The notes below the pieces were generated by a model. That model saw nothing but the letters and a program-made list of their open reading frames with translations, did not search any database and was not told the origin of the DNA. The position numbers and the translations under genes were made by a program. 46,348 nt of DNA from Selaginella moellendorffii (taxonomy: Eukaryota; Plantae; Lycopodiophyta), in assembly GCF_000143415.4 (NCBI RefSeq), contig NW_003314414.1:1-46348 (forward strand), written 5' to 3'. Shown piece after piece: positions 891-46,348 of the stretch. Numbering within the stretch: the stretch's first letter is position 1; each line of letters starts with the position of its first letter.

Positions 891-893
891 CTG

Positions 894-1837: not shown

Positions 1838-3768
1838 CCATGGGTAACGTCACGTTCACCACTGGGGAGAGAAACCTTGCGTGTCTTTGAAGAGCCTGCT
1901 TCACGTATGTGGAGTGAGGTATCCGTCCTTTGCTGTCGTTTGCCTTGTGATCTGGTGCCTCTGCCAGCATCTTCGTGGTGTTGTCTCGGAATTCCACGCT
2001 CCCTCTCCTTCCACATCTTGTCAAAGCAGCTCTGGACAAGCATCTTAACAGTGTCTTCCTTGGGCAGTGTCTCCGCCTTGGCTCGTGCAGCATCCTCTGC
2101 AGCTTCCCTTTGCTTGCGAGCATTTTCCTTTTTGCTCTCCTCAACTCCATATGCCACTGCTCCAATTGCAGTCGCACGTTGGTATTCAGCTATCAACTGA
2201 TGCTTGCGGGCATTGAGAGTATGTGTGACAGCCTCTCGTTGTGCATTGCCACAAGCCTGCAAAGCACAGTGAACAAAATCATCCATTCGATCATTAAAAC
2301 GTTGAGAGAGTCCATGGTTGATGAGATCCGCAAGGGTAGCAGCCTCAGCCTCTCGTGCCTTGAGCAGAGAATCAAGAAGGTCCTTCAAGTATTGTTCGTG
2401 GATTGCTTTGATGCTGGTATCAAGAAGTTCCTGACCGTGAGAGGTCACCTCAAGCTTTGGCATACGAATGCGAAGGTCTTGAGGGAACTGCTTTTTATCA
2501 CGGAGCTGAGTCAATCTCTTCACAGCCTTGTGAGCTTGATTTAGAGACTTGAGCTCGTTCATGAATTCCTTGATCGAGCATTCAAGGATGGCAGAAAGAG
2601 CCTCATCAAGCCTACCAAGTCCCTCAGTCGAGGAGCTAGTGAGGGCATTGCCAGGGGCAAGGAAAGGTGGCAACTGCTGTGGAAGAGTGTTTCCAGTAGC
2701 AGAAATGCCAGCACTATTCTGCAACACTGTGAAGAGGTCTACCAATCCAGAGAATGGAGTAGATGATGGCACAGCTGGGGATGAAAAAGGTGGTGGGATT
2801 GAAGTTGTTGATGAAAAGAGTGTTGGTAAAGTTGAGGCCATGGAGAAAGGTGGTGTGGTGGAGAAGGTTAATGGAACAGGAGGCGAGATGGAGAAAGTTG
2901 GTGGAGTATGAGGTGTTGTAGCAAAGAGAGGAGGGCTAGTTGTCGATGGAGTAGGTGTATGGATGGTTGTAGTTGTGAGCACAGAGGTACATGCAAGCGT
3001 AGACATGGGTGTATATGCTGGTGCATGTGGTGAGAGTGAGTTTGTTGTAGGCACAGCCATAGGGGATGTAGAGGTGGTCACAGGTGGCACAACGGATCTC
3101 CTAGGCGGCATAGTTGCTACTGGGGCAGTTGCTGGAGACAGAGTGGGCTGCATATCTGTCACTGATGCTACAGTGGACCATGTAGCCGTTGACAGTGGTG
3201 CTGAGACAGGTCGTGAAGCCAAGTGTCGTTCAGCCAAGTGTCGTTCCTCTGTAAGTGCCAGTTCCCTCAAGAATTCAGGAGAAGCTGGAGGAGACTCGGT
3301 CGTGAGTGCATATACTGACGTTTGAGGTGGTAGAGTGCGTGGTAGTGGTGTTGGAACTGACGTTTGAGGTGGTAGAGTGCGTGGTAGTGGTGTTGGAACT
3401 GACGTTTGAGGTGGTAGAGTGCGTGGTAGTGGTGTTGGAACTGACGTTTGAACTGGTAGAGTGCGTGGTAGTGGTGTTGGAACTGACGTTTGAGGTGGTA
3501 GAGTGCGTGGTAGTGGTGTTGGAACTGGTGCAGAGCAGGACGTTTGTATGGTAGTAAGCATTGTAATTGGTATGGAAGACAGCGTTGTATTTGGTGTGGA
3601 GGAAGAAGATGGTATGATACGAGATGAAAGTGTAAATCCGTGAATAGGGGCTGATCCATGAATGGAATTGGATGGTGGAGGATTTGGTGTTTGACGAGAT
3701 GATGAAGCGATGTGAGGAGGTGATGGAGGAGCATTTGCCATAAGAGGAAGAGAACACTGGTCATGCAT
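1375..3768 (-). CDS. PLE ORF1-like protein, 797 aa (S/T/P-rich N-terminus with 14-aa repeats, central coiled-coil, basic C-terminus)
   Basis: Long ATG-initiated ORF upstream of and overlapping the RT ORF; coiled-coil ORF1s are typical of EN-deficient PLEs. Confidence 0.65.
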   Translation of the reverse strand: MHDQCSLPLMANAPPSPPHIASSSRQTPNPPPSNSIHGSAPIHGFTLSSRIIPSSSSTPNTTLSSIPITMLTTIQTSCSAPVPTPLPRTLPPQTSVPTPLPRTLPVQTSVPTPLPRTLPPQTSVPTPLPRTLPPQTSVPTPLPRTLPPQTSVYALTTESPPASPEFLRELALTEERHLAERHLASRPVSAPLSTATWSTVASVTDMQPTLSPATAPVATMPPRRSVVPPVTTSTSPMAVPTTNSLSPHAPAYTPMSTLACTSVLTTTTIHTPTPSTTSPPLFATTPHTPPTFSISPPVPLTFSTTPPFSMASTLPTLFSSTTSIPPPFSSPAVPSSTPFSGLVDLFTVLQNSAGISATGNTLPQQLPPFLAPGNALTSSSTEGLGRLDEALSAILECSIKEFMNELKSLNQAHKAVKRLTQLRDKKQFPQDLRIRMPKLEVTSHGQELLDTSIKAIHEQYLKDLLDSLLKAREAEAATLADLINHGLSQRFNDRMDDFVHCALQACGNAQREAVTHTLNARKHQLIAEYQRATAIGAVAYGVEESKKENARKQREAAEDAARAKAETLPKEDTVKMLVQSCFDKMWKERERGIPRQHHEDAGRGTRSQGKRQQRTDTSLHIREAGSSKTRKVSLPSGERDVTHGWQGNEQGRNVVTGTPPTHSDAPGFSSRGPLHRQSPTVLGSQPAMTGRGGQRQSRGNGRPPRSQPNWPSGRGRQTTPRPPPAAQQRQPTQNQKPPSPPRGQGMQPSQHHNNTPLHERTQRYGLGRNSPPQQRPHSPVTAVPVDRKGKAKVSGYL
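3315..3524. repeat. 5 x 42-bp tandem repeat encoding TSVPTPLPRTLPPQ
   Basis: Unit ctgacgtttgaggtggtagagtgcgtggtagtggtgttggaa starts at 3315, 3357, 3399, 3441 and 3483. Confidence 0.95.
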
Positions 3769-3910: not shown

Positions 3911-4260
3911 GGTGGAGTCACCTTGGAGGCGAGTGACCCATGAGCGACGCCGGGTCATCGTGCTCGAGTTGGACCGCTTGGCTGCGACGACGTCGAGCTA
4001 GATCGACATGGTGTTCGTCTGGCTTGGCATCATTGTGATCGAGTGGAGGAGTGGCGAGGCGAAGCAGGTGGCTTCAAGCTCCGCGGTGGAGTCACCTAGG
4101 AGGCGGACGGCCCAAGAGCAGCGCCGGGCGTTCGCGCTCATAGTTTCACGAGTTTCTTCGAGAGTGCGCTCTCAATGTAGTTTTGATCCCTTTGGGATTG
4201 GGGTAATGTACATATATGTTTAGCGATCTCGCCGGATTGCAACACCACGGGGTGTCTTTG

Positions 4261-4358
4261 ACCCTAAACGCCTAAACGCGCCTAAACCCTAAACCCTAAA
4301 ACCCTAAACCCTAAACCCTAAACCTAAACCCCTAAACCCTAAACCCTAAACCCTAAAC
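4261..4358 (+). repeat. Degenerate (CCCTAAA)n telomeric tract
   Basis: Seen directly; it is the end of the first copy of the direct repeat starting gcgatctcgccggattgcaac. Confidence 0.95.
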
Positions 4359-4370: not shown

Positions 4371-4428
4371 AGACGACTACACCCGGCTGATGAGTCCCAA
4401 AAAGGACGAAACCGGTCTCGGGTTGTCT
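4371..4428 (+). ncRNA. Minimal type I hammerhead ribozyme
   Basis: Core CTGATGA (4387-4393), stem II GTCC-caaaaa-GGAC, GAAA, palindromic mini stem III ACCGGT, cleavage triplet GTC (after 4417). Stem I is CCCGG/TCGGG, extended by AGACGAC/GTTGTCT. Confidence 0.9.
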
Positions 4429-4586
4429 CTTGTCCTCTCCCTCGCTCACGAATGAATGAAAATTCATTCCCTCGCCTCCTCTACTTGCTCTCGATCACGC
4501 CGTTTCGACAACGGCACACAGAGAATGTGGATTGCACAAAGTGGTGCCGCGATCTCGCCGGATTGCAACACCACGGGGTGTCTTTG

Positions 4587-4675
4587 ACCCTAAACGCCTA
4601 AACGCGCCTAAATCCTAAACCCTAAACCCTAAACCCTAAACCCTAACCCCTAAACCCTAAACCCTAAACCCTAAA
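4587..4675 (+). repeat. (CCCTAAA)n telomeric tract abutting the 26S target-site repeat
   Basis: Seen directly; joins ctagtccgac at 4676. Confidence 0.95.
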
Positions 4676-4762
4676 CTAGTCCGACTTTGTGAAATGACTT
4701 GAGAGGTGTAGTCTAGTCCGACTTTGTGAAATGACTTGAGAGGTGTTCTAGTCCGACTTTGT
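4676..4762 (+). repeat. Reiterated 26S rDNA target sequence (36+35+16 bp)
   Basis: (t)ctagtccgactttgtgaaatgacttgagaggtgt(ag) x2 plus tctagtccgactttgt; same arrangement as 37770-37857. Confidence 0.95.
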
Positions 4763-5477
4763 TAAACGGGGCTTTTTATTTTCCAGCAAAAAACCAAAAA
4801 ACTGGGCATGGTTTCGTTTGGCACAAAACCAGCAAAGAGCCTTTATCTAGAGGAGCCTACAATGGAAGTACCTACAGAAAGGGGGGTTGCTCGTGAACTG
4901 GCGCCCGAAGGTCTTCCTAGATGCGTCACCTGGAACCATTCATCCGGCGGTGTCCACATCGATTCCCGAGTACCTGCCTCCCCTTGCTTCCACAAGAAAT
5001 GCCAGATCTGCGCTTCTTTTTTTGCTCTTTCTGGGCCATTTCTCCCTCCTCTTTTTTCCAGTTGTAGGACACGGGCTGCTGCTGCAGTTATCATTCTAGT
5101 CCACACCCGTGACGCCACCACCCTTGGTCCTTCTTCCCTGTCATTAAAGATTCTGTTGCACCGGGCTTTCCATACTTCCCACATTGTAATTCCTCGCAGT
5201 AGGTCCACTATCTCTGTTGGGATTCCTTCTATGTCTGTTCGAGTTGTGTTAAGCTGGTCAAACCGCGGTGCCCCTTCTTCTCTTGATGTCCATTTCCAAG
5301 AGTCTGTTCCATTTCGCATTCCTGCGGCAGCTTCGCCCCATACTACCGCTTCATACGTGAGGCACACTTGTCTCTGGGAGTGTTGTTGCAGCAACCAGCA
5401 CGTGCTTCTCCACACGTCTTGTGCGCTTTCACATTCCCATAATATATGCCTTTGTGTCTCCCTCGCTCCACATTTGT
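4763..5477 (-). mobile_element. LINE copy A: 3'-terminal fragment of the 26S-specific L1/Tx1-like element
   Basis: Near-identical to 37858-~38570 (ORF2 C-terminus and 3' UTR). Confidence 0.95.
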
Positions 5478-5514
5478 GCTCTCTACCTCCTCAGCTGTTA
5501 CCTGATTAAGGTTA

Positions 5515-5735
5515 GGGGGGCCCCGTGCTCCCCCGAGAACACATGACGCAAGTGCCGTCCCCCGGGGCCGATGCTGCCCCGGGGGCGCGGTTTGGAAATC
5601 CAATTTCGAACGGTCGAGGAGATAAATCCTTTGCAGATGACTTAAATAGGGGATGGGGTACTGTAAGTGGCAGAGTAGCCTTGCTGCTACGATCCGCTGA
5701 GGTTCATCCCTCTGTCCCACCGATTTGTCCCACCC
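5515..5735 (+). rRNA. 26S (LSU) rRNA 3'-terminal fragment (boundaries approximate)
   Basis: AAATCCTTTGCAGAtGACTTAAATA..TGTAAGTGGCAGAGTAGCCTTGCTGCTACGATCC is the conserved LSU 3' end. Confidence 0.85.
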
Positions 5736-7075: not shown

Positions 7076-7193
7076 GAGTGGGTTCAAACCGTGACTATGG
7101 CACTGGATCCCATCAGACCTCCAAAGTTAAGCGTCCTTGGGCTTGAATAGTACTGGGCTGGGTGACCACCCGGGAAGTCCAAGTGACCCCCTC
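7076..7193 (+). rRNA. 5S rRNA gene linked inside the 35S IGS
   Basis: GGATCCCATCAGA..AGTTAAGCGT..AGTACTGGGCTGGGTGACCACCCGGGAAGTCC; helix I pairs (GAGTGGGTTC/GACCCCCTC); TATAAG about 30 bp upstream; oligo-T downstream. Confidence 0.9.
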
Positions 7194-7204
7194 TTTTTTT
7201 TTTT
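7194..7204 (+). terminator. Pol III oligo-T terminator of 5S
   Basis: T run immediately after the 5S 3' end. Confidence 0.8.
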
Positions 7205-33735: not shown

Positions 33736-36700
33736 TTCTGAATCCTCGGGCGCTGCCAAGACGCTGTCTCTCCACCCAATGGTATGGGCCCATTGGTCGG
33801 AGTGGCCATGCAAACGGGATTCTCGCCGTTCCTCGGAACCTGAACAAGTTCGGCGCTTGCTCCACAAAATTGTCTTCTCGAATGGAGAACCTCTGCGGGT
33901 TCCAGTTGAAGTTGTAGGCCAGGATGTCCTCCAGGGTCCGGCCTATGTCTTGTCCGGGCGTGATCAAAATTGCCGGCGGAGCGTATCCAACTCTGTTGTC
34001 AATCCATTCCCCCAGGAGCTTGGGAGGGTTCGTTCCACTGACATAGAGCTCTACTTCACATACTGCTCTTCTCGGTGGGGTGAACCCTGGCGGGCAGTTT
34101 CCTCTTGGCAAGGCAATGCAAAGTCTTCCGTTCTTCCTGATCTTGAACGTGATTGTTGTTGTTCTTGTTCTACTGGCCCCGGCGCCCTCTGTGTTGCCTG
34201 CTGAGGTGGTAGTTCTCCTTTATCCTGGACAGTCTCTACTTCAGTGTCAGGTCCCTTTGCCTCCCCCACGGCTTGTCCTTCAAAAAGTCTTCCTGTTGGC
34301 CTCCATTCTTTTCCTCGTGATGTCCCTGACTGTCCTTTTTCCTGCTTGGCTGCTGTTGATTGCTCCCCTTGTCCCTCCTCCTTCTGTCCTTTTGTTCGAG
34401 GCTTCTTGCTTTCTCCACTGGAGGCCGCTTTCTCTATTGTTTCCCTTTCCCCTCTTGCTCCTCGTTTCTTGCCTTCCGAGCCACTGTTTGCTTTTTGTCG
34501 GTCTTCCCCTGTTTCCGGCATTCCCCCCATGCTTGCTCCTCTGGCCAAACAGTGTTTCCCAATGTGTCCTGTTTGCCGGCAGATGATGCACACGCTCGGG
34601 TTCGGTAGCAGCATAACCCGAATCCTTCTTGGCACTTCCCCCTTCCCTGGCTTGAGTTCTATCTCGAAGGGGATGTGTACTTCTTTCGGAATCCTGACTT
34701 TGACCGTGACTCTGTCTCCCACTGGCATTCCTTCCATCCTTATGAACGTAGCAAACTGCCTCAGTATTGCTGCCAGAATCTTGTCTTCTGCCAGTGCCAC
34801 GTCCATTCCCTGTAGCTCAAAGTTCACGATCACGGATGGCGGGAGTAGCATCCTTTTTTTCTGGGGCGTGAAGTTGTTGTGGTATGCTCTGAAGAAGAGC
34901 TGGAAGTCCAACTGTGCATACGCATCCACTCGCAATAGCTTGTGCCGAGCTCTCTCATCCTTGATGACTACATTATAGCACTTTTCCCCCAGGTCCTTCA
35001 CATCTTCTGCTAAAACCGTGACCAACATGTCATGGTACGCCAACGCTGCGCACACCCAATCTGACACTACAAAACCTGCCGGGACTGCTCCCTCCACTAT
35101 CACGTGCACGGTTTCTTCCGCTCATCTGGCTTGCAGCTTGTTTAACTCCTCCATGAATTCTTCCGGGTCAACCTCTAGCACATCGCTTGCTGGCCCATGT
35201 GGCATTCTCATGGGCTTCCTTGGTGGCATTATCTCCTCGATCTTCATGGGTGGTGGCCCAAACGGGACTATGGGAGCATCCGGGCAGACAGACATTTTCG
35301 AGTACTGCGGTAGTACCTTTGGGTACCCTGTTCCCGGCTCTTGTTTCCCGTCCGGGGATATCACCACTTCTGGCGTGAGCTCTTCCCGGTTCCCTCTGGA
35401 TGACGATGCTTCCCATTGTCTCGCTTCTTCCCACTTCCCCTTGCCCTTGTCATCCCTCATTCTGCCATTGAATTCCTGTCCGACCGGTTCTTCATATATT
35501 CGCGCCATTTGTTCCATTTCAATCGGTCTTTCTTGTCTGGCTTCCTGTTCCTGCCTTTCTTTGGTAGCCTTTTCCCTTTCAGCTTCTTCTTCCAGTACCC
35601 GCTTTGCTTCCTCTTCTGCCAGACGTCTAGCTTCTTGCTTTTTACGCACGTTGGCTTCCCGGATTGCCTTGAAACACGGGGGGCCCTTGTCCAGCGGGCA
35701 GCACGTTTTGACCCTTCGCTTGATCCCGGACGGGGACCCTACCCCTGCTTCCTTCCCGCTGGCTTCTTTCTCCGTCCTTCCCGGTGCATTTTCCTCCCCC
35801 GTCCCCGGTGACTCGTTGGTGGTGTTTCTTCTAGGAGCTCTCGTGAGGGGTGCTCCCTCTTCCTCGCTTGAGTCCTCTTTTCCTTTGCTTTCCGTATTGA
35901 CTACCGGCACTTCTCCTGTCAGCGCCTCTTCTAGATCCAGTACCTCCGGCAGCTGCACACCTCTGGCTCTTCCGCCTGCCGTACTCATCCTCGCTGTTGT
36001 CCTTGCTCGCGGCATACTTCCTCCGGTGTCTTCCTCTTTTTTCCGTTGTTCCCCCTCTGATTCTTGCGATCCTCTTCTCCTCTCTCCCTCTTTTTCCCCC
36101 TTTTCCTTCCCTTCCGTTCCCTCCACTTCGTCTACGACCCTCTTTCCTTTCGGAGATTTTTCCCCCTTGTCTTTCCCTCTCCTCTTGCTTACCGCCTTGC
36201 CTTTGTCTTCGCGCTGCCCTTCGTCGTTTACCGAAAATAAAGCCCTCCGAATTGACAAGTCCCCTTTAAATAGCGCTGACCCTGGTTGCCACTTGTCGTT
36301 CCGCCATTTGCTGCCCACTCCTCCACATTTTTCTTCCCGTTTCCCTGTCCATGTTGATATCGGACATGATTGTTTCCTTGGATTCTTCGGCTTCTCCTCG
36401 GACATTACCCCGCCACGCGTCCCTTCCCTGTATTTCATGCTTAGATTTTCCCCCCATGCATCTCCACGTGTCACCTTGTCCTTCTTCCCCTCCCCTCCGA
36501 CAGTGACTTGCTCAGTCGCTTTTATTCCCACTTGCTGCGTGTTGATGACGTTGTTACTGTCCTCGTTTTTCTCCCGATTTGCTACGATCTTGACAGTTAT
36601 TCCGCCGTTCTCCCCTCTTAACTCCTTCCTTGGATTTCCCGCACCCACATTCATTCGCCGTCTAGCCGTTGTCCCGGGATTCCCACCACTCCCGATTCCT

Positions 36701-36804
36701 CCCATCTTGTTCTGCCGCGTGTCCACCATCTCTTCCGTCCCTTCTTCTCCTCTCAGTCGCATCCTAGCCGTCCAGAGCAGCGGTTTTTTGCCTTTGAACA
36801 TCAT
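33728..36804 (-). pseudogene. Copy B ORF1 (H3-tail-like motif, coiled coil, CCHC knuckle); stop at 35122, frameshift near 34110; likely true start 36015
   Basis: CIICRQTGHIGKHC; collinear with copy C ORF1. Confidence 0.85.
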
Positions 36805-37769
36805 GATCTTGCTTCAAGCTTTGCACTTCCTTTCTTGGGCGTGTCTCTGGCCAGTGAGCTTGGTCTTCCAACTAAAGCGGAGCTTCCCTCTTGCCCAGTT
36901 ACTTCTGCTCAAGATCTCGGTTGCTTAGAGTTTTTGAACCTTCAGACAAAAGTTCCGGGTCCCAAGCTGATTTCATCCGGCCAGCCCAGTTTTGCTGTGC
37001 CTAAAGGTCTCCCTGACCAGTACTCCAGATCCTTGCCTTATTGCGACCATTCCTCTTATCCTCCCAGCGCGCGCTCTTTCTTTTTTAGTGCATGCATCGA
37101 GGAGTGTTTGGGGGACTTTTAAGACTTTTCACTCAGCTTTTCATGACCCGGCGATCTTACTCCTCTCTGGCCTGTTCCCCCGAGGACCGAAAGGACTTTC
37201 TTACAAGCCAATACTGTCAGCCGAGGGGGGGCCAGAAAGGATGTCCTTCAGAGCCATTCCAAAACTTGAGCTACGAGCCAAAAAATGCACGGCGGGGGTG
37301 ATTCAGTGGGATGCTTTCGATTCTTTTCTTTTTTTCTTGCGCTTTGCAGCTGGAGGAGAGGCTTCGCTTCTAGCTCAGATCTTTAGCCTTTGTCTGGTGA
37401 TGGCTCGCGGAAGAAACCGGGCCACCGACTTGAAACCAGCTTGGACCACACTATTAGCTCTATCCACCCAATCTTTTGCTGTAACTTGCGCGAGTCACTC
37501 ACACCCAGAGAAGGAACAAACTCACTGCCTGGCCACACTCAGAGCAGTCGTGCTTTCGCCTGGCGCTTCCAGATCTATTCTACCAGATAGTGCAAAAAGC
37601 CCGCTCGGATCTGTCTACCGCCAAAAACTTCGATCCGCTTGCCTCACTGCTGTTCAGCGCCACCGCCGCCCCCAAGCGTCCACTCCACTCTCTCCCTACG
37701 GCCTCTCTGCTCTCCTCTTGCCTTAGCGCCTTCCCTCTCCTCTCCGCCTTCACTCGCCATTCTCTTCTT

Positions 37770-37857
37770 TCTAGTCCGACTTTGTGAAATGACTTGAGAG
37801 GTGTAGTCTAGTCCGACTTTGTGAAATGACTTGAGAGGTGTTCTAGTCCGACTTTGT
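37770..37857 (+). repeat. Reiterated 26S target sequence between LINE copies B and C (37+35+16 bp)
   Basis: Seen directly. Confidence 0.95.
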
Positions 37858-37937
37858 TAAACGGGGCCTTTTATTTTCCAGCAAAAAACCAAAAAACTGG
37901 GCATGGTTTTGTTGGGCACAAAACCAGCAAAGAGCCT

Positions 37938-40900
37938 TTATCTAGAGGAGCCTACAATGGAAGTACCTACAGAAAGGGGGGTTGCTCGTGAACTGGCGCC
38001 CGAAGGTCTTCCTAGATGCGTCACCTGGAACCATTCGTCCGGTGGTGTCCACATCCATTCCCGAGTACCTGCCTCCCCTTGCTTCCACAAGAAATGCCAG
38101 ATCTGCGCTTCTTTTTTTGCTTTTTCTGGGCCATTTCTCCCTCCTCTTTTTTCCAGTTGTAGAACACGGGCTGCTGCTGCAGTTATCATTCTAGTCCACA
38201 CCCGTGACGCCACCACCCTTGGTCCTTCTTCCCTGTCATTAAAGATTCTGTTGCACCGGGCTTTCCATACTTCCCACATTGTAATTCCTCGCAGTAGGTC
38301 CACTATCTCTGTTGGGATTCCTTCTATGTCTGTTTGAGTTGTGTTGAGTTGATCAAACCTTGGTGCCCCTTCTTCTCTTGATGTCCATTTCCAAGAGTCT
38401 GTTCCATTTCGCATTCCTGCGGCAGCTTCGCCCCATACTGCCGCTTCATACGTGAGGCACACTTGTCTCTGGGAGTGTTGTTGCAGCAACCAGCACGTGC
38501 TTCTCCCCACGTCTTGTGCGCTTTCACATTCCCATAATATGTGCCTTTGTGTCTCCCTCGCTCCACATTTGTCACATGCTTGGTCCACGAGGTGTATGTT
38601 CCTTTTTGATGGTAGCCTGTCTTGCATTGTCAACCACATGAAGTATCTTGTTTTTGCTGCCCAACGTCCTTTCCATAACTCTTTCAATATCTCCTGCTGT
38701 GTCTTGTCCTGTATGTTGGCTCGTTTCATCCTTGATACCAGTAGTGAGTCACTGCGCGGCCGAATGAGCTTTCTCCCCAATCTTGTTTCGTAGGCAAAGA
38801 ATTCTTCCTTTTTCCTTCCCCGCCAATTCCATTCCGTTGGATCCCAGGCCAGCTCGCTTAATTTTTGTTGTCTGAACCAGTACATCCTAGCTACCTGGCC
38901 TTCCGTTATCTTCGGGTCCATTGATGCTGTTTTCTTATCTATCTGTATAACACGTATCGGCTCTGTTCGTGACATGTCCGGTCGTAGGCTCTCCTTGGGC
39001 ACTTTGTATGGTAATAGTCTCCCAGCCACCCCGACTTCGAACACATAACATTTCGTCTGGTCTTGAGTTGCCGTGTATATCACCTTTTCCTCGGCTATCC
39101 ACCAGGCTGGTGTCGTTTCTCTGACTTCCTTAATGCTCTGTTTGCATTTCCCTTGTGCTTCTTCAAAGGCTGTTTCGAACTTTTTCAGCCTGTGTGCCGA
39201 GATTTCCAGCCCATAGAAAACCTTTAGTCTATCTCTGTTCATTTCTGTTTCCCCCGCTTTTATCATTGAGTCAGCTTCTGCAAATGTTCTCATCCCAGCA
39301 CTGTGAAGGTCCCGGCATACTTTGTCTATTCCTCTGTCCGCAGTTTCCCCCAAACATTTCCCCTTATATTGAAATAGCTTATTAAGAAATATTGGTTGTC
39401 GATCCAACTCATAAGTGTTTGTCGGTTTTCTTTTTTCCAACTTGCTCTTGAATTCCTTCCACAATCTGAACAGTTTCCCAGAGAACGTATTTGGTTTTGG
39501 CATTTTCAGTGCGCCTTCCATGAACAGCCACCTTTCATCTTTTTCCCAGTTTTGCCTCGTGTGTTCTAGTCTGTCCGGAATGACTTTAAGCAGTTGATGG
39601 CGTAGTAGGAGTTTCCATGGTTGGTTTCCGGGCATGTTCATTCGGTGAAAGATTTTGAATAGCAGCGCCTTGCATTGTTCCTCTATATCTATAATGTTTA
39701 TCCCCCCATCCTGTTTTGCTCTTGTGACCGAGCTCCATCCAACCTTTGCCCCTCCTCTTGATACTGTTGCTTGGCCCTTCCATACATATGTCCTGATGAG
39801 CTTGTTCATTTCTTTTAGTGTTTTCTTGTCCAAGTTCCATGATGCCGCCAGGAACCAGATTGCTCCTAGCACTATATTATTCGCCACTACACATCTTGCC
39901 GAGAAGGACAGCTTCCGTGATGCCCAAAATTTCAGTTGATCTCGAAGCTTTTCGACCGCCTTCTGATTCTGCGGGAGGGGGTCGTATGCCCGGCCTATTT
40001 GGAACCCCAAGTATCTTGTTGTTTCTCCTTGTTTCAGCCACTTAAAATCCCACTCTCTCCCCCAATTTGGCGGGTCAGAGCTTGGCAGCCATATTCCCAC
40101 CGATTTTCCCCAGTTTATTCGTGAGCCAGCTGCCAGGTTGAAGAAGTCCAAGTCCTTCTTGACCTTGCTCATGTTTTCCGGGGAGCCTGTCGTGATGATT
40201 CCTGTGTCATCCGCGAAGGCACTGGATTTCAACTGCCTTTCCTCTGTCCCTGCCAGGTCTTGTAGTGAGTCTCTGCACCCAGGCAATACCAGCCCTTCCG
40301 GTCCGTCCATCCTTGCCAGATAATGTGCTAAAGCATCGGCCACGAACAGGAACAAAAACGGGGCTAATGGACACCCTTGTCTTACTGACCGTTGGAGCTT
40401 GATCGTGTTCCCTACTGTCCCGTTTATTGTGACCTTGCTTGATGCGCCTTGGTATAAGGTGGCCGTCCATCCTATAAACTCTTCAGGGATGCCGATCTTC
40501 CTCATTGTCGTTTGCAGGAATTCCCAGTCTACTCTATCATATGCCTTCTCGTAATCCAGGAGTATTATGGCCATCTCTAATCCTTGGTCTTTGACTTGTT
40601 CTTGTGTGAGCAACACTGTCAATATGTTGTCTACCAGTTGTCTTCCTTCCACAAACCCATTCTGGGTGTCATGTATCGTTTCTGGCAATAACGGCCTTAA
40701 TCTCTTGGCTAGCGCCTTGGCTACTATCTTGTATAGTGTATTTAGCATCGATATCGGTCTCCAGTTCTTGAGTAGAGATGCATCCCCTCCTTTTTTGGGA
40801 ATGAGCGCAATTATTCCATCTATGGCTCCTGGGGGCCATTGTCCTGTTCTCATCACCTCCTTCCATGTGTCCAACACTACTGGCCCCAACCATTCCCAGT

Positions 40901-42371
40901 TTGCTTTATAATATGCTGGTGGCATCCCATCTTCCCCCGGCATCTTGTCATCGTTCAAGTCTCTAACTGCATCCTCTAGCTCTTCCAGTGTAAAGTTTCT
41001 GCACAGGGTCCGTGCTAAGGCTTCATCTACTTTCTGGGGCACCGACTGAAGAACTTCCTCCATGGCCGTTTTCCTTTCTTCTGTCCACGGTTCTGCTCTA
41101 AACAGTCCTTGGTAGTATGTCTCAGCCATCCTGTGCATCTCCTGTAGGCTCGTATGCATCTCACCTTGATCATCCTTGAGCCTGAACATTGGCGGGGACG
41201 TAACTCTTGCTTTTATGGACTTGTAAAACTCTTTGTTTAGCGCATTCTCACTAATATGCCATTTGAGGTGCCCCGACCTTATAAACGCCTCCATTTTTTC
41301 CGCTTCCAGGGTGAAAAGTTGGGCTTTGGTTCTTGCTAGCTGAGTTCTCAGTGACGTATCCAGCGGGTCCAACCTGATCAATCTCTTAATGGCTTCAATA
41401 TTTCTTCTTATTGCTTGCACTTTTTTGAAAACTTTTCTTCGCTTGTTCTGTGTCTTTTTCCAGATTTCATTGGCTATCTCAATTGTGAACTTGTGCAGAT
41501 CTCCTCCTTCTTGCTGATTCCATCTTTCTTTTATATGGTCATTCATTTTCCCGTCCTCAAAGTTTTTCCGCGATATTGGTGCAGGCCTCTTTGTTCCCCA
41601 CCTCTTTAAGATGGGAAGCGTCAAAGCCACCGAATTATGATCTGAGAAGTCTCTGTATCCCGTTGTTATATCTAATTTTCCACTATTCCGACACAGTTCG
41701 GGTGATATATAAAACCGGTCCAGTCTTCGTTGAATTCCCCGTTGTTGGTGCTCTTGCCATGTGAACCTTGGCTCGTGTTGTACAAACCCTGGGATGTTGT
41801 ATGTATCTTCTAGCCCCATCGCTAGCACTAGTTGTGCCCACATTGCTCTTTCCCTGCTTGTCCTTTTGTCTCTCATTTCTCCCCCATCTTTGTCTAGCTC
41901 CTCTTCCACAAAGTTGAAGTCTCCCGTGACCATCCATGTTGAGGGTTGTGGAGGTATTCGGTGTACCAATTCATTCCAGAAATCTGCTCTTTCAGAGGAG
42001 CTTCCTGCTGGTGCATACACATTCAGGAGGCCTACTAGCATGTCTCCTATCTTGAACTGGACACACTGTGCTCTACCTGGTACCAGTATTGCATGATCTT
42101 CAACCAAAGATTCCCACGTGCCTTTTACCACTATTAATGTGCCTCCACTGCATGATACTGCCGGATTCCAAAAATATTTCCCTTTCGTAAACTTATAAAC
42201 TTGATCCATTCTTGAGAGCCTATGCTCTTGCACACACAAGAAATCAAAACATTGCGTCACACCTTCTACCTGTCTAAGGTACTGTCTAAACTTCGTCTTT
42301 TTGTTATTCAGTGCTGATCTCTCCTTCTTCAGGCCTCCCACGTTCCACGTTCTCACGTTGATGTTAACCAT
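37938..42371 (-). CDS. Intact LINE ORF2: APE endonuclease, reverse transcriptase, C-terminal zinc finger
   Basis: TWNVGG, QEH, NVYAP, GDFN, RRLDRFY, SDH; NWRPISMLN, DYEKAYDRV, QGCPLAP, FADD, YLG; CDKC..ETQRHILWEC. Open frame begins at 42449; likely ATG at 42371. Confidence 0.95.
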   Translation of the reverse strand: MVNINVRTWNVGGLKKERSALNNKKTKFRQYLRQVEGVTQCFDFLCVQEHRLSRMDQVYKFTKGKYFWNPAVSCSGGTLIVVKGTWESLVEDHAILVPGRAQCVQFKIGDMLVGLLNVYAPAGSSSERADFWNELVHRIPPQPSTWMVTGDFNFVEEELDKDGGEMRDKRTSRERAMWAQLVLAMGLEDTYNIPGFVQHEPRFTWQEHQQRGIQRRLDRFYISPELCRNSGKLDITTGYRDFSDHNSVALTLPILKRWGTKRPAPISRKNFEDGKMNDHIKERWNQQEGGDLHKFTIEIANEIWKKTQNKRRKVFKKVQAIRRNIEAIKRLIRLDPLDTSLRTQLARTKAQLFTLEAEKMEAFIRSGHLKWHISENALNKEFYKSIKARVTSPPMFRLKDDQGEMHTSLQEMHRMAETYYQGLFRAEPWTEERKTAMEEVLQSVPQKVDEALARTLCRNFTLEELEDAVRDLNDDKMPGEDGMPPAYYKANWEWLGPVVLDTWKEVMRTGQWPPGAIDGIIALIPKKGGDASLLKNWRPISMLNTLYKIVAKALAKRLRPLLPETIHDTQNGFVEGRQLVDNILTVLLTQEQVKDQGLEMAIILLDYEKAYDRVDWEFLQTTMRKIGIPEEFIGWTATLYQGASSKVTINGTVGNTIKLQRSVRQGCPLAPFLFLFVADALAHYLARMDGPEGLVLPGCRDSLQDLAGTEERQLKSSAFADDTGIITTGSPENMSKVKKDLDFFNLAAGSRINWGKSVGIWLPSSDPPNWGREWDFKWLKQGETTRYLGFQIGRAYDPLPQNQKAVEKLRDQLKFWASRKLSFSARCVVANNIVLGAIWFLAASWNLDKKTLKEMNKLIRTYVWKGQATVSRGGAKVGWSSVTRAKQDGGINIIDIEEQCKALLFKIFHRMNMPGNQPWKLLLRHQLLKVIPDRLEHTRQNWEKDERWLFMEGALKMPKPNTFSGKLFRLWKEFKSKLEKRKPTNTYELDRQPIFLNKLFQYKGKCLGETADRGIDKVCRDLHSAGMRTFAEADSMIKAGETEMNRDRLKVFYGLEISAHRLKKFETAFEEAQGKCKQSIKEVRETTPAWWIAEEKVIYTATQDQTKCYVFEVGVAGRLLPYKVPKESLRPDMSRTEPIRVIQIDKKTASMDPKITEGQVARMYWFRQQKLSELAWDPTEWNWRGRKKEEFFAYETRLGRKLIRPRSDSLLVSRMKRANIQDKTQQEILKELWKGRWAAKTRYFMWLTMQDRLPSKRNIHLVDQACDKCGARETQRHILWECESAQDVGRSTCWLLQQHSQRQVCLTYEAAVWGEAAAGMRNGTDSWKWTSREEGAPRFDQLNTTQTDIEGIPTEIVDLLRGITMWEVWKARCNRIFNDREEGPRVVASRVWTRMITAAAARVLQLEKRGGRNGPEKAKKEAQIWHFLWKQGEAGTREWMWTPPDEWFQVTHLGRPSGASSRATPLSVGTSIVGSSR

Positions 42372-45300
42372 TTCTGAATCCTCGGGCGCTGCCAAGACGC
42401 TGTCTCTCCACCCAATGGTATGGTCCCATTGGTCGAAGTGGCCATGCAAACGGGATTCTCACCGTTCCTCGGAACCTGAACGAGTTCGGCGCTTGTTCCA
42501 CGAAATTATCTTCTCGAATCGAAAACCTCTGCGGGTTCCAGTTGAAGTTGTAGGCCAGAATATCCTCCAGAGTCCGGCCTATGTCTTGTCCAGGCGAGAT
42601 CAGAATTGCCGGTGGGGCGTATCCAACTCTGTTGTCGATCCATTCCCCCAGGAACTTGGGAGGGTTCGTTCCACTGACGTATAGCTCAATTTTGCAAACT
42701 GCTCTTCTCGGGGGGGTGAATCCTGGCGGACAGTTTCCTCTTGCAAAGTCCTCCGTTCTGCCTGATCTTGAGCGTGACTGTTGTTGTTGTTCCACTGGCC
42801 CCGGTACCCTCTGTGTAGCCTGCTGTGGTGGCATTTCACCTTTATCTTGGACCATCTCTACTTCTGTGTCAGGTTCCTTTGCCTCCCCCACGGCTTGTCC
42901 TTCGAACCGTCTTCCTGTCGGCCTCCATTCTTTCCCTCGCGAAGCCCCCGACTGTGCTTTTTCCTGCTTGGCTGCTGTTGATTGCTCCCCTTGTCCCTCC
43001 TCCTTCTGTCCTTTGGTTCGAGGCTTCTTGCTTTCGCCACTGGAGGCTGCTTTCTCTGTTGTTTCCCTTTCCCCTCTGGCTCCACGTTTCGTGCCTTCCG
43101 ATCCACTGTTTGCTTTCTGTCGGTCCTCTCCTGTTTCCTGCATTCCCCCCACACTTGCTCCTCTGGCCAAACAGTGTTTTCCAATGTGTCCCGTGTGCCG
43201 GCAAATAATGCATACACTCAGGTTTGGTAGCAGCATAACCCGAATCCTTCTTGGCCCTTGCCCCTTCCCTGGCTTGAGTTCTATCTCGAAGGGGATGTGA
43301 ACTTCTTTCGGAATCCTGACTTTGACCGTGACTCTGTCTCCCACTGGCATTCCTTCCATCCTTATGAACGTAGCAAACTGCCTCAGTATTGTCGCCAGGA
43401 TCTTGTCTTCGGCCAGTGCCACGTCCATACCTTGTAGCTCAAAGTTCACAATCACAGATGGGGGGAGTAACATCCTTTTTTTCTGGGGCGTGAAATTGTT
43501 GTGATATGATCTGAAGAAGAGCTGAAAGTCTAACTGTGCGTACGCATCCACTCGCAGCAACTTGTGCCGAGCTCTCTCGTCCTTGATGACCACATTATAG
43601 CACTTTTCTCCCAGGTCCTTCACATCTTCTGCTAAAACCGTGACCAACATGTCGTGATATGCCAGCGCTGCNNNNNNNNNNNNNNNNNNNNNNNNNNNNN
43701 NNNNNNNNNNNNNNNNNNNNNNNNNNNNNNNNNNNNNNNNNNNNNNNNNNNNNNNNNNNNNNNNNNNNNNNNNNNNNNNNNNNNNNNNNNNNNNNNNNNN
43801 NNNNNNNNNNNNNNNNNNNNNNNNNNNNNNNNNNNNNNNNNNNNNNNNNNNNNNNNNNNNNNNNNNNNNNNNNNNNNNNNNNNNNNNNNNNNNNNNNNNN
43901 NNNNNNNNNNNNNNNNNNNNNNNNNNNNNNNNNNNNNNNNNNNNNNNNNNNNNNNNNNNNNNNNNNNNNNNNNNNNNNNNNNNNNNNNNNNNNNNNNNNN
44001 NNNNNNNNNNNNNNNNNNNNNNNNNNNNNNNNNNNNNNNNNNNNNNNNNNNNNNNNNNNNNNNNNNNNNNNNNNNNNNNNNNNNNNNNNNNNNNNNNNNN
44101 NNNNNNNNNNNNNNNNNNNNNNNNNNNNNNNNNNNNNNNNNNNNNNNNNNNNNNNNNNNNNNNNNNNNNNNNNNNNNNNNNNNNNNNNNNNNNNNNNNNN
44201 NNNNNNNNNNNNNNNNNNNNNNNNNNNNNNNNNNNNNNCTCTTCTGCCAAGCGTCTAGCTTCTTGCTCTTTTCGCGCGTTGGCTTCCCTGATTGCCTTGA
44301 AGCAGGGGGGGCCCTTCTCCAGCGGGCAGCACGTCTTGATTCTTCGCTTAATCCCGGTCGGGGATCCTACCGCCGCTTCCTTCCCACTGGCTTCCTTTTC
44401 TGCCCTTGCCCCTGCGTTTTCCTCCCCGACTCCTGGCGATTCGTTGGTGGGGTTTCTTCTAGGCGCTCTCGTGAGTGGGGTTTCCTCTTCCTCACTTGCA
44501 TCCTCTTTTCCTTTGTTTTCCACATTGGCTGGCGAGACTTCTCCTACCAGCGTTTCTTCTGGATCTAGTACCTCTGGGAGCTGCACACCCCTGGCTCTCC
44601 CTCCTGCAGTGCTCATCCTCGCCGTTGTCCTTGCTCGTGGCATTTTTCCCCCAGTGTCTTCCTCTCTTTTTTTTCCCTCTGATTCTAGCGTTCCTTTCTT
44701 TCCCTCCCTCTCCTTTTCCCCCTTTTCCCACCCTTCCGTTCCCTCCCCTTCTTCCACTTCCCACTTTCCTTTCGGAGATTTTTCCCCCTTGCCTTTCCTT
44801 TCCCTTTCGCTTACCGCTTTGCTTTTGTCTTCACGCTGGCCCTCGTCTTTTACCGAAAACAATGCCCTCCGGATTGACAAGTCCCCTTTAAATAGTGCTG
44901 ACCCTGGCTGCCACATGTCATTCCGCCATTTGCTGCCCGCTCCTCCACGTTTTTCTTCCCCCTTTCCTGTCCACGTTGATAGCGCACACGATTGCTTTCT
45001 TGGATTCTTCGGCTTCTCCTCGGACATGACCCTGCCACGCGTCTCTTCCTTGGATTTTCTGCATGGATTTTCGCCCCATGCATCTCCACGTGTCGCCTTG
45101 TCCTTCATCCCCTCCTTTCCGACCGTGACCTGCTCGGTCTCTTTAATTCCCACTGGCTGCGTGGTGATGACGTTGTTACTGTCCTCGTTTTTCTCCCGAT
45201 TTGCTACGATCTTGACAGTTATTCCGCCTTTCCCCCATATTAACTCCTCCCTTGGTTTCCCCGCACCCGCATTCATTCGCCGTCTAGCCGTTGTCTCGGG

Positions 45301-45423
45301 ATTCCGGCCGCTCCCAATTCCCCCCATCTTGGTCCGCCGCGTGTCCACCATCTCCTCCGTCCCTTCTTCTCCTCTCGGTCGCATCCTAGCCGTCCAGAGC
45401 AGCGGCTTTTTGCCTTTGAACAT
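42364..45423 (-). CDS. Copy C ORF1 (spans the assembly gap); likely true start 44643 (MPRARTTARMSTAGG)
   Basis: CIICRHTGHIGKHC knuckle; collinear with B. Continuity across the Ns cannot be verified. Confidence 0.75.
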   Translation of the reverse strand: MFKGKKPLLWTARMRPRGEEGTEEMVDTRRTKMGGIGSGRNPETTARRRMNAGAGKPREELIWGKGGITVKIVANREKNEDSNNVITTQPVGIKETEQVTVGKEGMKDKATRGDAWGENPCRKSKEETRGRVMSEEKPKNPRKQSCALSTWTGKGEEKRGGAGSKWRNDMWQPGSALFKGDLSIRRALFSVKDEGQREDKSKAVSERERKGKGEKSPKGKWEVEEGEGTEGWEKGEKEREGKKGTLESEGKKREEDTGGKMPRARTTARMSTAGGRARGVQLPEVLDPEETLVGEVSPANVENKGKEDASEEEETPLTRAPRRNPTNESPGVGEENAGARAEKEASGKEAAVGSPTGIKRRIKTCCPLEKGPPCFKAIREANARKEQEARRLAEEXXXXXXXXXXXXXXXXXXXXXXXXXXXXXXXXXXXXXXXXXXXXXXXXXXXXXXXXXXXXXXXXXXXXXXXXXXXXXXXXXXXXXXXXXXXXXXXXXXXXXXXXXXXXXXXXXXXXXXXXXXXXXXXXXXXXXXXXXXXXXXXXXXXXXXXXXXXXXXXXXXXXXXXXXXXXXXXXXXXXXXXXXXXXXAALAYHDMLVTVLAEDVKDLGEKCYNVVIKDERARHKLLRVDAYAQLDFQLFFRSYHNNFTPQKKRMLLPPSVIVNFELQGMDVALAEDKILATILRQFATFIRMEGMPVGDRVTVKVRIPKEVHIPFEIELKPGKGQGPRRIRVMLLPNLSVCIICRHTGHIGKHCLARGASVGGMQETGEDRQKANSGSEGTKRGARGERETTEKAASSGESKKPRTKGQKEEGQGEQSTAAKQEKAQSGASRGKEWRPTGRRFEGQAVGEAKEPDTEVEMVQDKGEMPPQQATQRVPGPVEQQQQSRSRSGRTEDFARGNCPPGFTPPRRAVCKIELYVSGTNPPKFLGEWIDNRVGYAPPAILISPGQDIGRTLEDILAYNFNWNPQRFSIREDNFVEQAPNSFRFRGTVRIPFAWPLRPMGPYHWVERQRLGSARGFRNG
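43672..44238. other. Assembly gap (Ns)
   Basis: Run of n. Confidence 1.
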
Positions 45424-46348
45424 CGTGATCTTTGCTTCAAGCTTTGCACTTCCTTTCTTGGGCGTTGCTCTGGCCAGCGAGCTTGGTTTTCCAACTCAAG
45501 TGGAGCTTCCCTCTTGCCCAGTTACTTCTGCTCAAGATCTCGGTTGCTTAGAGCTTTTGAACTTCCAGACACAAGTTCCAAGTCCAAACTGATTTCAGTC
45601 GGCTAGCCCAGTTTTGCTGTGCCCAGAATCCCCCCGACTAGTACTCCAGATCATTGCCTTATTGCGACCGTTCCTCTTATCCTCCCAGCGCGCGCTCTTT
45701 CTTTTTCAGTGCATGCAGTGGAGAGTGCTTGGGGGGTTTTTGAGACTTTTCACTTAGCTTCTTATAGCCCGGCGATCTTACTCCTCTCTGGCCTGTTCCC
45801 CCGAGGACCGAAAGGACTCTCTTACAAGCCAATACTGTCAGCCGAGGGGGGGCCAGAAAGGATGTCGTTCGGAGCCATTCCAAAACTTGAGTTACGAGCC
45901 AAAAAATGCACGACGGTGGTGATTCAGTGGGATGCTTTTGATTCTTTTTTCTTTTTTCTAGCGCTTTGCGGCTGGAGGAGAGGCTTCGCTTCCAGCTTTG
46001 ATCTTTAGCCTTTGTCTGGTGACCTCTTAGCTGAAAAAAAACCGGCCCACCGACTTGAAATCAGCTTGGACCACACTGCGAGCTCTATCCACCCAGTCTC
46101 TTGCTGTAACTTGCGCGAGTTGCTCACACCCAGCGAAGAACCAAACTCACTGCCCAGCCACACTCAGAGCCATCGTGCTTCTGCCTGGAGCTTCCAGATC
46201 TATTCTACCAGCCAATGCAAAAAACCCTCTCGAATCTGGCTGCAGCCGAGAAGACCCAACAGCGCGTCTCACTGCCGTCCAGCGCCAGCGCCACACTCAA
46301 GCGTCCACTCCACTCTCAGCCTGTGGCTGCGCTTCTCTCTTCTTGCCT

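What the first reader, a model, noticed from the sequence alone, without database searches (positions are those of the whole stretch)
44587..44643. LINE ORF1 encodes a histone H3 tail mimic with Met at the K9 position (H3K9M-like), with only synonymous changes between copies: candidate anti-silencing system
Seen: both copies (44643-44587 and 36015-35959) encode M-PRARTTARMSTAGGRARG. After Met removal this aligns in register with H3 ARTKQTARKSTGGKA (R2, T6-A7-R8, M9 for K9, S10-T11, then GG-R-A). Across these 19 codons the copies differ at 7 synonymous and 0 non-synonymous sites, while the frame upstream shows many replacements and indels. A TATTTAAA box is conserved ~250 bp upstream (44887-44894; 36265-36272), supporting this ATG as the real start. 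Known: K-to-M histone peptides (H3K9M, H3K27M, the EZHIP mimic) trap and inhibit SET-domain methyltransferases, and plant TEs and inactive rDNA are silenced by H3K9me2 (KYP/SUVH4-6 with CMT3). Inference: the rDNA-targeting LINE carries its own H3K9 methyltransferase inhibitor or decoy.
Basis: partly seen in the sequence, partly recalled or inferred. Interest (0 to 1): 0.95.

Follow-up and report, generated by a model that had tools for sequence, protein, structure and literature searches.

The report
Conserved H3-like motif inside LINE ORF1
The histone-H3-like peptide with Met at the K9 position is real and conserved in a Selaginella rDNA-specific LINE, but it lies about 260 residues inside a long disordered part of ORF1p rather than at its N-terminus, so the anti-silencing idea is untested and the resemblance is most likely coincidental.

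Summary
The peptide exists at both stated places. The two copies differ there by 7 synonymous and 0 replacement changes. The Met at the "K9" position is present in all 8 family copies I could collect, all from Selaginella moellendorffii.

The arguments for an N-terminal H3-tail mimic fail:
- The same frame stays open 260-262 codons further upstream in both copies, against 7.5-8.2 stops expected (P<0.001).
- That stretch has dN/dS 0.36, against 1.29 and 0.72 in the other two frames, and shows codon periodicity.
- All indels between lineages in it keep the frame.
- The "TATTTAAA box" encodes Leu-Phe-Lys inside another peptide island that is itself under purifying selection.

The motif therefore sits at about residues 261-279 of a roughly 1019-codon ORF1. 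AlphaFold2 predicts that region to be disordered, upstream of the coiled coil.

The H3 likeness is 8 of 17 identities, about what one 46-kb window yields by chance, and phmmer finds no H3 chain in the PDB. No ORF1 relative exists outside this species, and the nearest LINEs lack the motif. RNA evidence is almost nil.

One point favours the idea: T-A-R-(0-2 residues)-M occurs three times in the disordered region, far more than chance predicts.

Best reading: a lineage-specific short linear motif of ORF1p. The K9M-trap reading keeps about 10% probability.

The parts
44587..44643 (-). H3-like 19-codon block, copy B (MPRARTTARMSTAGGRARG). The Met at the 'K9' position is codon 44616-44614.
35959..36015 (-). 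The same 19-codon block in copy A. The 'K9' Met codon is 35988-35986.
44554..44643 (-). Full conserved island of 30 codons in copy B (the block plus VQLPEVLDPEE). Copy A equivalent: 35926-36015.
   Evidence: 11 synonymous against 1 replacement codon between A and B; invariant columns across the copies
42364..45423 (-). ORF1 of element B, 1019 codons counting a 567-N assembly gap at 43672-44238. It starts MFKGKKPLLW. The motif is at residues 261-279. The stop overlaps the ORF2 ATG (ATGGTTAA).
35122..36804 (-). N-terminal 560 codons of ORF1 in element A, ending at an in-frame premature stop (35124-35122). The conserved start ATG is at 36801.
44644..45423 (-).
   Evidence: 0 stops against 7.5-8.2 expected, P<0.001. 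dN/dS 0.36 against 1.29 and 0.72 in the other frames, Fisher P=0.003. Differences by codon position 20/30/45, P=0.007. Between-lineage indels of 48, 3, 3, 3, 9 and 6 nt.
44887..44894 (-). TATTTAAA string (36265-36272 in A). It lies in the ORF1 frame as codons for Leu-Phe-Lys, within the conserved peptide SALFKGDLSIRRALFSV.
45382..45393 (-). First T-A-R-M occurrence, ORF1 residues 11-14 (36760-36771 in A).
45274..45291 (-). Second related occurrence, T-A-R-R-R-M, residues 45-50 (36652-36669 in A).
37938..42371 (-). ORF2 of element B, intact: APE endonuclease, reverse transcriptase and zf-RVT domains.
29205..37770 (-). Element A, a degenerate full-length copy. Its 3' end abuts 26S rDNA sequence in antisense orientation.
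37842..46348 (-). Element B, cut by the window end in its 5' UTR.
37770..37841 (+). Two exact copies of a 35-nt 26S rDNA target segment between the 5' end of A and the 3' end of B.

Best explanation
The 19 codons are the first part of a conserved short linear motif of about 30 residues (MPRARTTARMSTAGGRARGVQLPEVLDPEE). It lies inside the long, intrinsically disordered N-terminal region of the ORF1 protein of an L1-type LINE. That LINE inserts antisense at one site in the 26S rDNA of Selaginella moellendorffii.

ORF1 most likely starts 260-262 codons further upstream, at ATG 45423 in copy B and 36801 in copy A (MFKGKKPLLW...). The motif is then internal, at about residues 261-290 of roughly 1019 codons. 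It sits about 100 residues before the predicted coiled coil and far before the RRM-like and CCHC zinc-knuckle part.

Shown: the position of the motif, its translation frame, purifying selection on it, the predicted disorder, and the restriction of the family to one species.

Inferred: the motif works as a docking or regulatory element of ORF1p. It could be an Arg-rich, Ser/Thr-containing segment for RNA contact, phosphorylation or binding of a host factor, and it is one of at least four such conserved islands in the disordered region. On this reading its likeness to H3 residues 2-17 with Met for K9 is coincidental.
For: - Sequence and selection. Both copies encode the motif, with 7 synonymous and 0 non-synonymous changes in 19 codons and 11 against 1 in 30 codons. 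It is a conserved island against the 74%-identical subfamily copy L001: 93% nucleotide identity in the motif against 73-77% in the flanks.
- The ORF extends upstream. There are no stops in 260-262 codons in A and B, against a mean of 7.5-8.2 in dinucleotide shuffles (P<0.001), while the other two frames hold 5-13 stops. dN/dS is 0.36 in frame against 1.29 and 0.72 out of frame, Fisher P=0.003. Differences by codon position are 20/30/45 (P=0.007), against 36/39/40 in the true 5' UTR. All six between-lineage indels in the upstream ORF keep the frame, whereas the 5' UTR indels are 1, 1, 1, 1, 3 and 5 nt.
- Other conserved peptide islands occur upstream: MFKGKKPLLWTARMR, VMSEEKPKNPRKQSC and ALFKGDLSIRRALFSV. 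The last contains the TATTTAAA string and shows 4 synonymous and 1 replacement codon.
- AlphaFold2 gives pLDDT below 50 for residues 9-370 and a confident helix at 376-436.
- The C-terminal part of ORF1 is homologous to the ORF1 of related LINEs, E=7e-11 to 9e-7. ORF2 has APE, RT and zf-RVT domains.
- The H3 likeness is weak statistically. It is 8 of 17, with three 7s and fifty-eight 6s elsewhere in the window, and phmmer finds no PDB histone chain at E<=10.
Against: - The translation start was not mapped. The ATG just before the motif is conserved in all 6 copies where it can be read, has A at -3, and no ATG in any frame lies in the roughly 270-290 nt before it. A shorter isoform starting there is therefore possible.
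- The core TARMST is an exact copy of H3 residues 6-11 with K9M. That is the segment SUV39-type SET domains grip (established knowledge; H3K9M trapping of Clr4 is described in PMC5030085).
- T-A-R-M occurs twice and T-A-R-R-R-M once in the disordered region. None of 50,000 shuffles gave two or more TARM. 'TAR' occurs nowhere else in ORF1 or ORF2.
- I cannot name the partner or the function of the motif.
Confidence: 0.6

Rival explanations
1. The TARMST segment, possibly together with the two upstream TAR(x)M sites, is a K-to-M pseudo-substrate. It lodges its Met in the lysine channel of SUVH-type H3K9 methyltransferases and blunts H3K9me2/CHG silencing of the element. It would work like H3K9M or like the internal K27M-like peptide of EZHIP.
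For: - Exact H3(6-11) with K9M, plus R2, G13 and R17 in register.
- Met present in 8 of 8 copies.
- Protein-level purifying selection on the motif.
- Location in a disordered, accessible segment.
- Three TAR(x0-2)M sites, where chance predicts fewer than one.
- K-to-M trapping of SET enzymes is an established mechanism (PMC5030085; EZHIP, bioRxiv 10.1101/585729), and EZHIP's mimic is also internal.
- The literature search found no transposon-encoded case, so it would be new.
Against: - The motif is not N-terminal, so the 'in register after Met removal' argument falls.
- 8 of 17 identity is roughly what one window gives by chance, and there is no PDB H3 hit.
- The conserved block runs on into VQLPEVLDPEE, which has no H3 counterpart.
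- The other two TAR(x)M sites lack S10-T11, and one has two residues between R and M.
- The family is limited to one species, and the nearest LINE ORF1s have no such motif.
- Most copies are decayed by C>T and G>A changes, and RNA is nearly absent. There is thus no sign of escape from silencing.
- No binding data exist.
Confidence: 0.1
2. The conserved Met codons matter as start codons. Internal initiation at the ATG at 44643/36015, or at the 'K9' ATG, would make a shorter ORF1p isoform. This could come from a sub-genomic transcript or from ribosome entry helped by the 230-nt purine-rich tract just upstream. The motif would then sit at that isoform's N-terminus.
For: - Both ATGs are conserved and have A at -3.
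- No ATG in any frame lies in the 270-290 nt upstream.
- A purine-rich leader-like tract (about 80% A+G) precedes the first ATG.
- The 5' UTR ahead of the upstream start holds 4-7 short uORFs.
Against: - The tract between TATTTAAA and the ATG is open in frame. Its four indels are all multiples of 3, and it shows an excess of third-position changes.
- An RNA-library contig spans the TATTTAAA string (44840-45059) instead of starting after it.
- Start-codon use would not explain the conservation of the 29 following residues.
Confidence: 0.15
3. The block has no function of its own. Its conservation between copies is a sampling effect in a young, shallow family, and the H3 likeness is a post-hoc pick.
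For: - The A-against-B signal alone is modest: P=0.014-0.02 for the window, before correcting for about 13 windows of that size.
- All copies come from one genome.
Against: - The island is also conserved against the 26%-diverged L001 subfamily, while the flanks are not.
- All replacements seen in it are C>T or G>A changes in copies that carry stops or frameshifts elsewhere.
Confidence: 0.1

Closest known systems
L1-clade plant LINEs with 'type I' ORF1p (RRM-like domain plus CCHC zinc knuckle), and site-specific rDNA LINEs such as R1/R2 and the Tx1 group
   Same: - Two ORFs with an overlapping stop and start (ATGGTTAA).
- ORF2 with APE endonuclease, RT and zf-RVT domains.
- ORF1 with a coiled coil and a CX2CX4HX4C knuckle.
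- ORF1 homologous to the ORF1 of related LINEs.
- Insertion at one fixed rDNA site, with 5'-truncated copies.
   Different: - ORF1 carries a lineage-specific extension of about 600 residues ahead of the RRM-like part, of which AlphaFold2 modelled the first 560 and scored about 370 as disordered. The nearest relatives have about 50 residues there.
- The element lies antisense to the rRNA, so Pol I read-through cannot supply sense RNA.
K-to-M histone pseudo-substrates: H3K9M and H3K27M oncohistones, and the EZHIP K27M-like peptide
   Same: - A stretch identical to the residues flanking the substrate lysine, with Met in place of Lys (TARMST against H3 TARKST).
- Placed in a disordered region.
- EZHIP's mimic is likewise internal.
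   Different: - No biochemical or genetic evidence here.
- The similarity is short and not significant at the scale of the window.
- The motif is not at the N-terminus, as it is in H3.
- It would target the SUV39/SUVH class rather than PRC2, and it is carried by a retrotransposon.
Transposon-encoded anti-silencing factors (VANC of Arabidopsis VANDAL elements; PMC5735166, PMC10398659)
   Same: The concept is the same: a transposon protein that counteracts the host's epigenetic silencing of its own family.
   Different: VANC is a sequence-specific DNA-binding protein of a DNA transposon and acts on DNA methylation at cognate copies. It is not a histone mimic and shares no sequence relation. Nothing comparable has been shown for this LINE.
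H3K9-like 'ARKS/T' mimic motifs in non-histone proteins (automethylation sites of G9a and SETDB1; bioRxiv 10.1101/2025.01.21.634156)
   Same: These are internal A-R-K-S/T-type motifs recognised by H3K9 methyltransferases and their readers. They show that an internal position does not prevent recognition.
   Different: Those motifs keep the Lys and are substrates. Here Met replaces Lys, so the motif could only act as a trap.

Membership tests
L1-type LINE (APE + RT, type I ORF1p) | ORF2 with an apurinic-type endonuclease and a reverse transcriptase | tested here: met
   Pfam Exo_endo_phos at 1e-15, RVT_1 at 6e-31 and zf-RVT at 1e-7 on the 1503-aa ORF
L1-type LINE (APE + RT, type I ORF1p) | ORF1p with a coiled coil, an RRM-like domain and a CCHC knuckle | tested here: met
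   - AlphaFold2 helix at 376-436.
- CIICRHTGHIGKHC in the sequence.
- BLASTP of the C-terminal part to the ORF1 of related LINEs, E=7e-11. The L005 ORF1 carries a weak zf-CCHC hit.
- Pfam itself gave no hit on this ORF1.
Site-specific rDNA LINE | Independent copies share the same rDNA junction | tested here: met
   - The 3' ends of A, B and fragment 4676-5477 share one end sequence. At A and B it abuts the 26S sequence TCTAGTCCGACTTTG.
- L003 and L004, on other scaffolds, are also flanked by antisense LSU rRNA.
K-to-M histone pseudo-substrate inhibitor (H3K9M-like) | Sequence identical to the residues flanking the target lysine, with Met at the lysine position | tested here: met
   TARMST equals H3 residues 6-11 with K9M, and the match is 8 of 17 over residues 1-17. 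At the scale of the window this is not beyond chance, and phmmer finds no H3 chain in the PDB.
K-to-M histone pseudo-substrate inhibitor (H3K9M-like) | Met invariant among functional family members | tested here: inconclusive
   The Met is present in 8 of 8 copies. All are from one species, most are decayed, and no ORF1 relative exists elsewhere.
   The ORF continues 260-262 codons upstream with coding signatures. The motif starts at residue 261 in B and 263 in A.
K-to-M histone pseudo-substrate inhibitor (H3K9M-like) | Motif lies in an accessible, extended segment | tested here: met
   AlphaFold2 gives pLDDT of about 32-35 and no secondary structure around residues 260-300. The alignment behind the model is shallow, with 6 sequences.
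K-to-M histone pseudo-substrate inhibitor (H3K9M-like) | SAM-dependent binding to and inhibition of the cognate SET-domain methyltransferase | not testable with these tools
   This needs peptide or enzyme assays, or complex modelling. The structure tool takes single unmodified chains only.
K-to-M histone pseudo-substrate inhibitor (H3K9M-like) | Protein expressed and present in the nucleus | tested here: inconclusive
   There were 0 and 2 reads in two raw RNA-seq runs. Low-depth contigs in two RNA-labelled runs do not cover the motif. Localisation cannot be tested here.

The most novel reading that the evidence does not exclude
ORF1p of this rDNA-specific LINE carries up to three T-A-R-(0-2 residues)-M sites in its disordered N-terminal region. 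The third is an exact H3(6-11) K9M copy. These sites would act as SET-domain pseudo-substrate traps for SUVH-type H3K9 methyltransferases. That would make this the first retrotransposon-encoded oncohistone-like anti-silencing device.
Probability: 0.1. Interest if true: 0.9.

Novelty: new member of a known kind. Interest (0 to 1): 0.35.

Why it matters
If the motif did trap H3K9 methyltransferases, it would be the first natural K9M-type inhibitor. It would also be the first histone-mimic counter-defence encoded by a retrotransposon, linking oncohistone biochemistry to the arms race between transposons and their hosts.

On present evidence it is instead an example of a lineage-specific conserved linear motif in the disordered N-terminal region of a LINE ORF1 protein. 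That is of interest mainly to people annotating plant LINEs. It also warns that open purine-rich 'leaders' can be coding sequence.

The peptide test is cheap: M, K and A variants against a SUVH SET domain. The idea can therefore be settled quickly.

Tried and rejected
- phmmer of the 25-residue peptide against all PDB chains, including H3 tails and K-to-M peptides: no match at E<=10.
- Pfam scan of ORF1: no family.
- HMMER search of ORF1 against 1.84 billion cluster representatives, plus two word-index searches: only Selaginella moellendorffii proteins. Deep conservation of the Met therefore could not be tested.
- ORF2-based search for relatives: the best hits are only about 42% identical in the RT. 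The three ORF1s I fetched (L005-L007) share only the RRM/knuckle part and have short N-termini without any ARKS/ARMS-like site.
- RNA reads for a transcription start: essentially no coverage in the raw RNA-seq runs. Patchy low-depth contigs do not cover the motif, and one spans the TATTTAAA string. No start site could be called.
- Internal duplication as the source of the three TAR(x)M sites: the local alignment is not significant (P=0.14). The only nucleotide repeat is 19 nt at 79% identity with 102-nt spacing. Left open.
- A nucleotide-level function for the block: rejected, because 7 of its 19 third positions differ between the copies while the peptide is identical.
- The long antisense ORFs on the + strand over this region: judged a by-product of the pyrimidine-rich antisense strand and not followed.
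- Literature: no paper on a transposon-encoded K-to-M histone mimic, and none on this Selaginella element.
Full report
**What is there.** The window holds rearranged rDNA: LSU, a partial SSU, 5.8S and a linked 5S. It also holds two tandem copies, on the minus strand, of an L1-type LINE of about 8.6 kb.
- Element A (29205 to about 37770) is degenerate. It has an in-frame stop at 35124-35122 and frameshifts in ORF1 and ORF2.
- Element B (37842 to the window end) has an intact ORF2 with APE, RT and zf-RVT domains. Its ORF1 is open from 45423 to 42364 but is interrupted by a 567-N gap.
- A and B are 87% identical in the 5' third and 92% identical elsewhere.
- Protein searches identify the genome as Selaginella moellendorffii.
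- The element abuts 26S rDNA in antisense orientation at a fixed sequence, both here and on other scaffolds.

**Check of the observation.**
- Both copies encode MPRARTTARMSTAGGRARG at the stated coordinates.
- A Nei-Gojobori count over the 19 codons gives 7 synonymous and 0 non-synonymous differences.
It covers 30 codons through VQLPEVLDPEE, with 11 synonymous and 1 replacement codon.
- The ungapped match to H3 residues 1-17 is 8 of 17, with TARMST equal to H3 residues 6-11 carrying K9M.

**Where ORF1 starts.** Several independent lines say the ORF begins 260-262 codons earlier, at ATG 45423 in B and 36801 in A (MFKGKKPLLW...).
1. The frame has no stop across 780-786 nt in either copy. Dinucleotide shuffles give 7.5-8.2 stops per frame (P<0.001), and the other two frames hold 5-13 stops.
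2. In-frame dN/dS between A and B is 0.36, against 1.29 and 0.72 in the other frames. The Fisher test gives P=0.003.
3. Differences fall 20/30/45 on codon positions 1/2/3 (P=0.007). In the real 5' UTR upstream of 36802 they fall 36/39/40.
4. All six indels between lineages in this stretch keep the frame: 48, 3, 3, 3, 9 and 6 nt. The 5' UTR indels are 1, 1, 1, 1, 3 and 5 nt.
5. The stretch contains its own conserved peptide islands. One is SALFKGDLSIRRALFSV, in which TATTTAAA encodes Leu-Phe-Lys. That island shows 4 synonymous and 1 replacement codon between A and B.

The conservation of the 'TATA box' is therefore explained by coding constraint. The stops found in the upstream frame of other copies (L002, L003, L001) are TGG>TAG or CAG>TAG-type transitions. 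Two of these three copies (L003 and L001) are also broken downstream. The motif is thus internal, starting at residue 261 in B and 263 in A of about 1019.

Internal initiation cannot be excluded. The ATG is conserved, has A at -3, and follows 270-290 nt without any ATG. RNA data could not settle this: two raw RNA-seq runs gave 0 and 2 reads. Low-depth contigs from RNA-labelled runs leave the motif uncovered, but one of them spans the TATTTAAA string rather than starting after it.

**Family conservation.**
- Eight copies were recovered: A, B, L001-L004, P0007/P0131 and P0128. All are from S. moellendorffii.
- The Met at the K9 position is present in 8 of 8 copies. The preceding ATG is present in all 6 copies where it can be read.
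- Other H3-like positions vary: R2Q, T6M (three times), A7V, T11I, G14E, G14R and R17Q. Wherever the DNA could be read, these changes are C>T or G>A transitions in decayed copies. They look like post-insertion damage rather than family variation.
- Against the 74%-identical L001 subfamily, the block is 93% identical at the nucleotide level while its flanks are 73-77% identical.
- Purifying selection on the peptide is therefore real. The depth is shallow, however. An exhaustive HMMER search of 1.84 billion cluster representatives found ORF1 relatives only in this species.
- The nearest LINEs by ORF2, about 42% identical in the RT, have ORF1s that share only the RRM/zinc-knuckle part (E=7e-11 to 9e-7). 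Their N-termini are short and hold no ARKS/ARMS-like site.
- The N-terminal extension of about 600 residues, and the motif with it, is a lineage-specific addition.

**Structure.** AlphaFold2 on the first 560 residues, with a 6-sequence alignment, gives pLDDT below 50 for residues 9-370. It gives a confident long helix at 376-436, the expected ORF1p coiled coil. The motif is thus a conserved island in a disordered region, which is the usual signature of a short linear motif. At least three other such islands exist upstream, and another (GIKRRVKTCCPLDKGPPCFKAIREAN) lies downstream.

**How strong is the H3 likeness?**
- It is the best six-frame match in the window, but the same scan gives three 7-of-17 and fifty-eight 6-of-17 matches. 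A single 8 is roughly what one window yields.
- Shuffles of the ORF reach 8 or more in 0.7% of trials, and TAR.ST appears in 0.06%.
- phmmer of the 25-mer against all PDB chains, many of them H3 tails, finds nothing at E<=10.
- With the register argument gone, the case rests on a six-residue identity that was picked after the fact.

**A point in favour of the idea.**
- T-A-R-M occurs twice in the disordered region, at residues 11-14 and 267-270 in copy B numbering (269-272 in A). T-A-R-R-R-M occurs once, at residues 45-50.
- 'TAR' occurs nowhere else in ORF1 or ORF2.
- None of 50,000 shuffles gave two TARM.
- The DNA word ACGGCNAGGATG is over-represented accordingly, and always in frame.
- This could be a repeated peptide motif, which fits multivalent traps but also any other partner. 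It could instead be a relic of duplication; a 19-nt repeat at 79% identity with 102-nt spacing is weak evidence for that.
- The two upstream sites lack S10-T11, and one has a different spacing between R and M. What the three sites share is therefore TAR...M, not the H3-specific RMST.

**Verdict.**
- The promoter and N-terminus arguments are wrong.
- The anti-silencing mechanism is untested and rests on a short resemblance.
- The most likely reading (0.6) is a lineage-specific linear motif of ORF1p whose H3 likeness is coincidental.
- The K9M-trap reading keeps about 0.1. It is biochemically plausible: K-to-M trapping of SUV39-type enzymes is described in PMC5030085, and the internal mimic of EZHIP in bioRxiv 10.1101/585729. 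It would be new, since no transposon-encoded case turned up in the literature searches. It is also cheap to test with peptides.

**Limits.**
- All comparisons are within one genome.
- The ORF1 of B cannot be called intact across its N gap.
- The AlphaFold2 alignment is shallow.
- The contigs of the RNA runs may include DNA.

Noticed in passing
window 45382-45393, 45274-45291 and 44614-44625 (copy A: 36760-36771, 36652-36669, 35986-35997): T-A-R-M occurs twice and T-A-R-R-R-M once in the disordered N-terminal region of ORF1p, and 'TAR' occurs nowhere else in ORF1 or ORF2. Two or more TARM appeared in 0 of 50,000 shuffles. The cause (repeated linear motif or old duplication) is unresolved.
   Followed up: partly
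window 37770-37841: Between the 5' end of element A and the 3' end of element B lie two exact 35-nt copies of the 26S rDNA target segment (TCTAGTCCGACTTTGTGAAATGACTTGAGAGGTGT). They are followed by a third partial copy. This suggests repeated insertion into the same site.
   Followed up: partly
window 4676-5477 and 5482-5726: A third, 5'-truncated copy of the LINE 3' end, 98% identical to B, lies directly beside a 245-nt fragment of the LSU rRNA 3' end.
   Followed up: no
window 4381-4423: Rfam hit to the type I hammerhead ribozyme (40.5 bits, E=6e-7). It lies between direct repeats at 4223-4351 and 4549-4676, which may indicate a retrozyme-like or Penelope-like element.
   Followed up: no
window 24658-25545 and 26662-29166: The rDNA unit is rearranged. 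Only the first 600 nt or so of the SSU rRNA are present, followed 145 nt later by 5.8S. The 2.5-kb LSU match spans model positions 24-3399, so it has large internal losses. A 5S gene lies at 7076-7194 in the spacer.
   Followed up: no
L004:5000-5003: A 5'-truncated copy on another scaffold begins exactly at the 'K9' Met codon, so the gene model P0003 starts MSTAGG. This looks like a coincidence of truncation, but it produces an annotated protein that starts inside the motif.
   Followed up: partly
window 42364-42371: The ORF1 stop and the ORF2 start overlap as ATGGTTAA. This arrangement fits termination-reinitiation coupling.
   Followed up: no
window 35018-36928 (+) and 44279-45592 (+): Long open frames of 437-636 codons lie antisense to the purine-rich ORF1 5' part. 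They are most likely a compositional by-product of the pyrimidine-rich strand.
   Followed up: no
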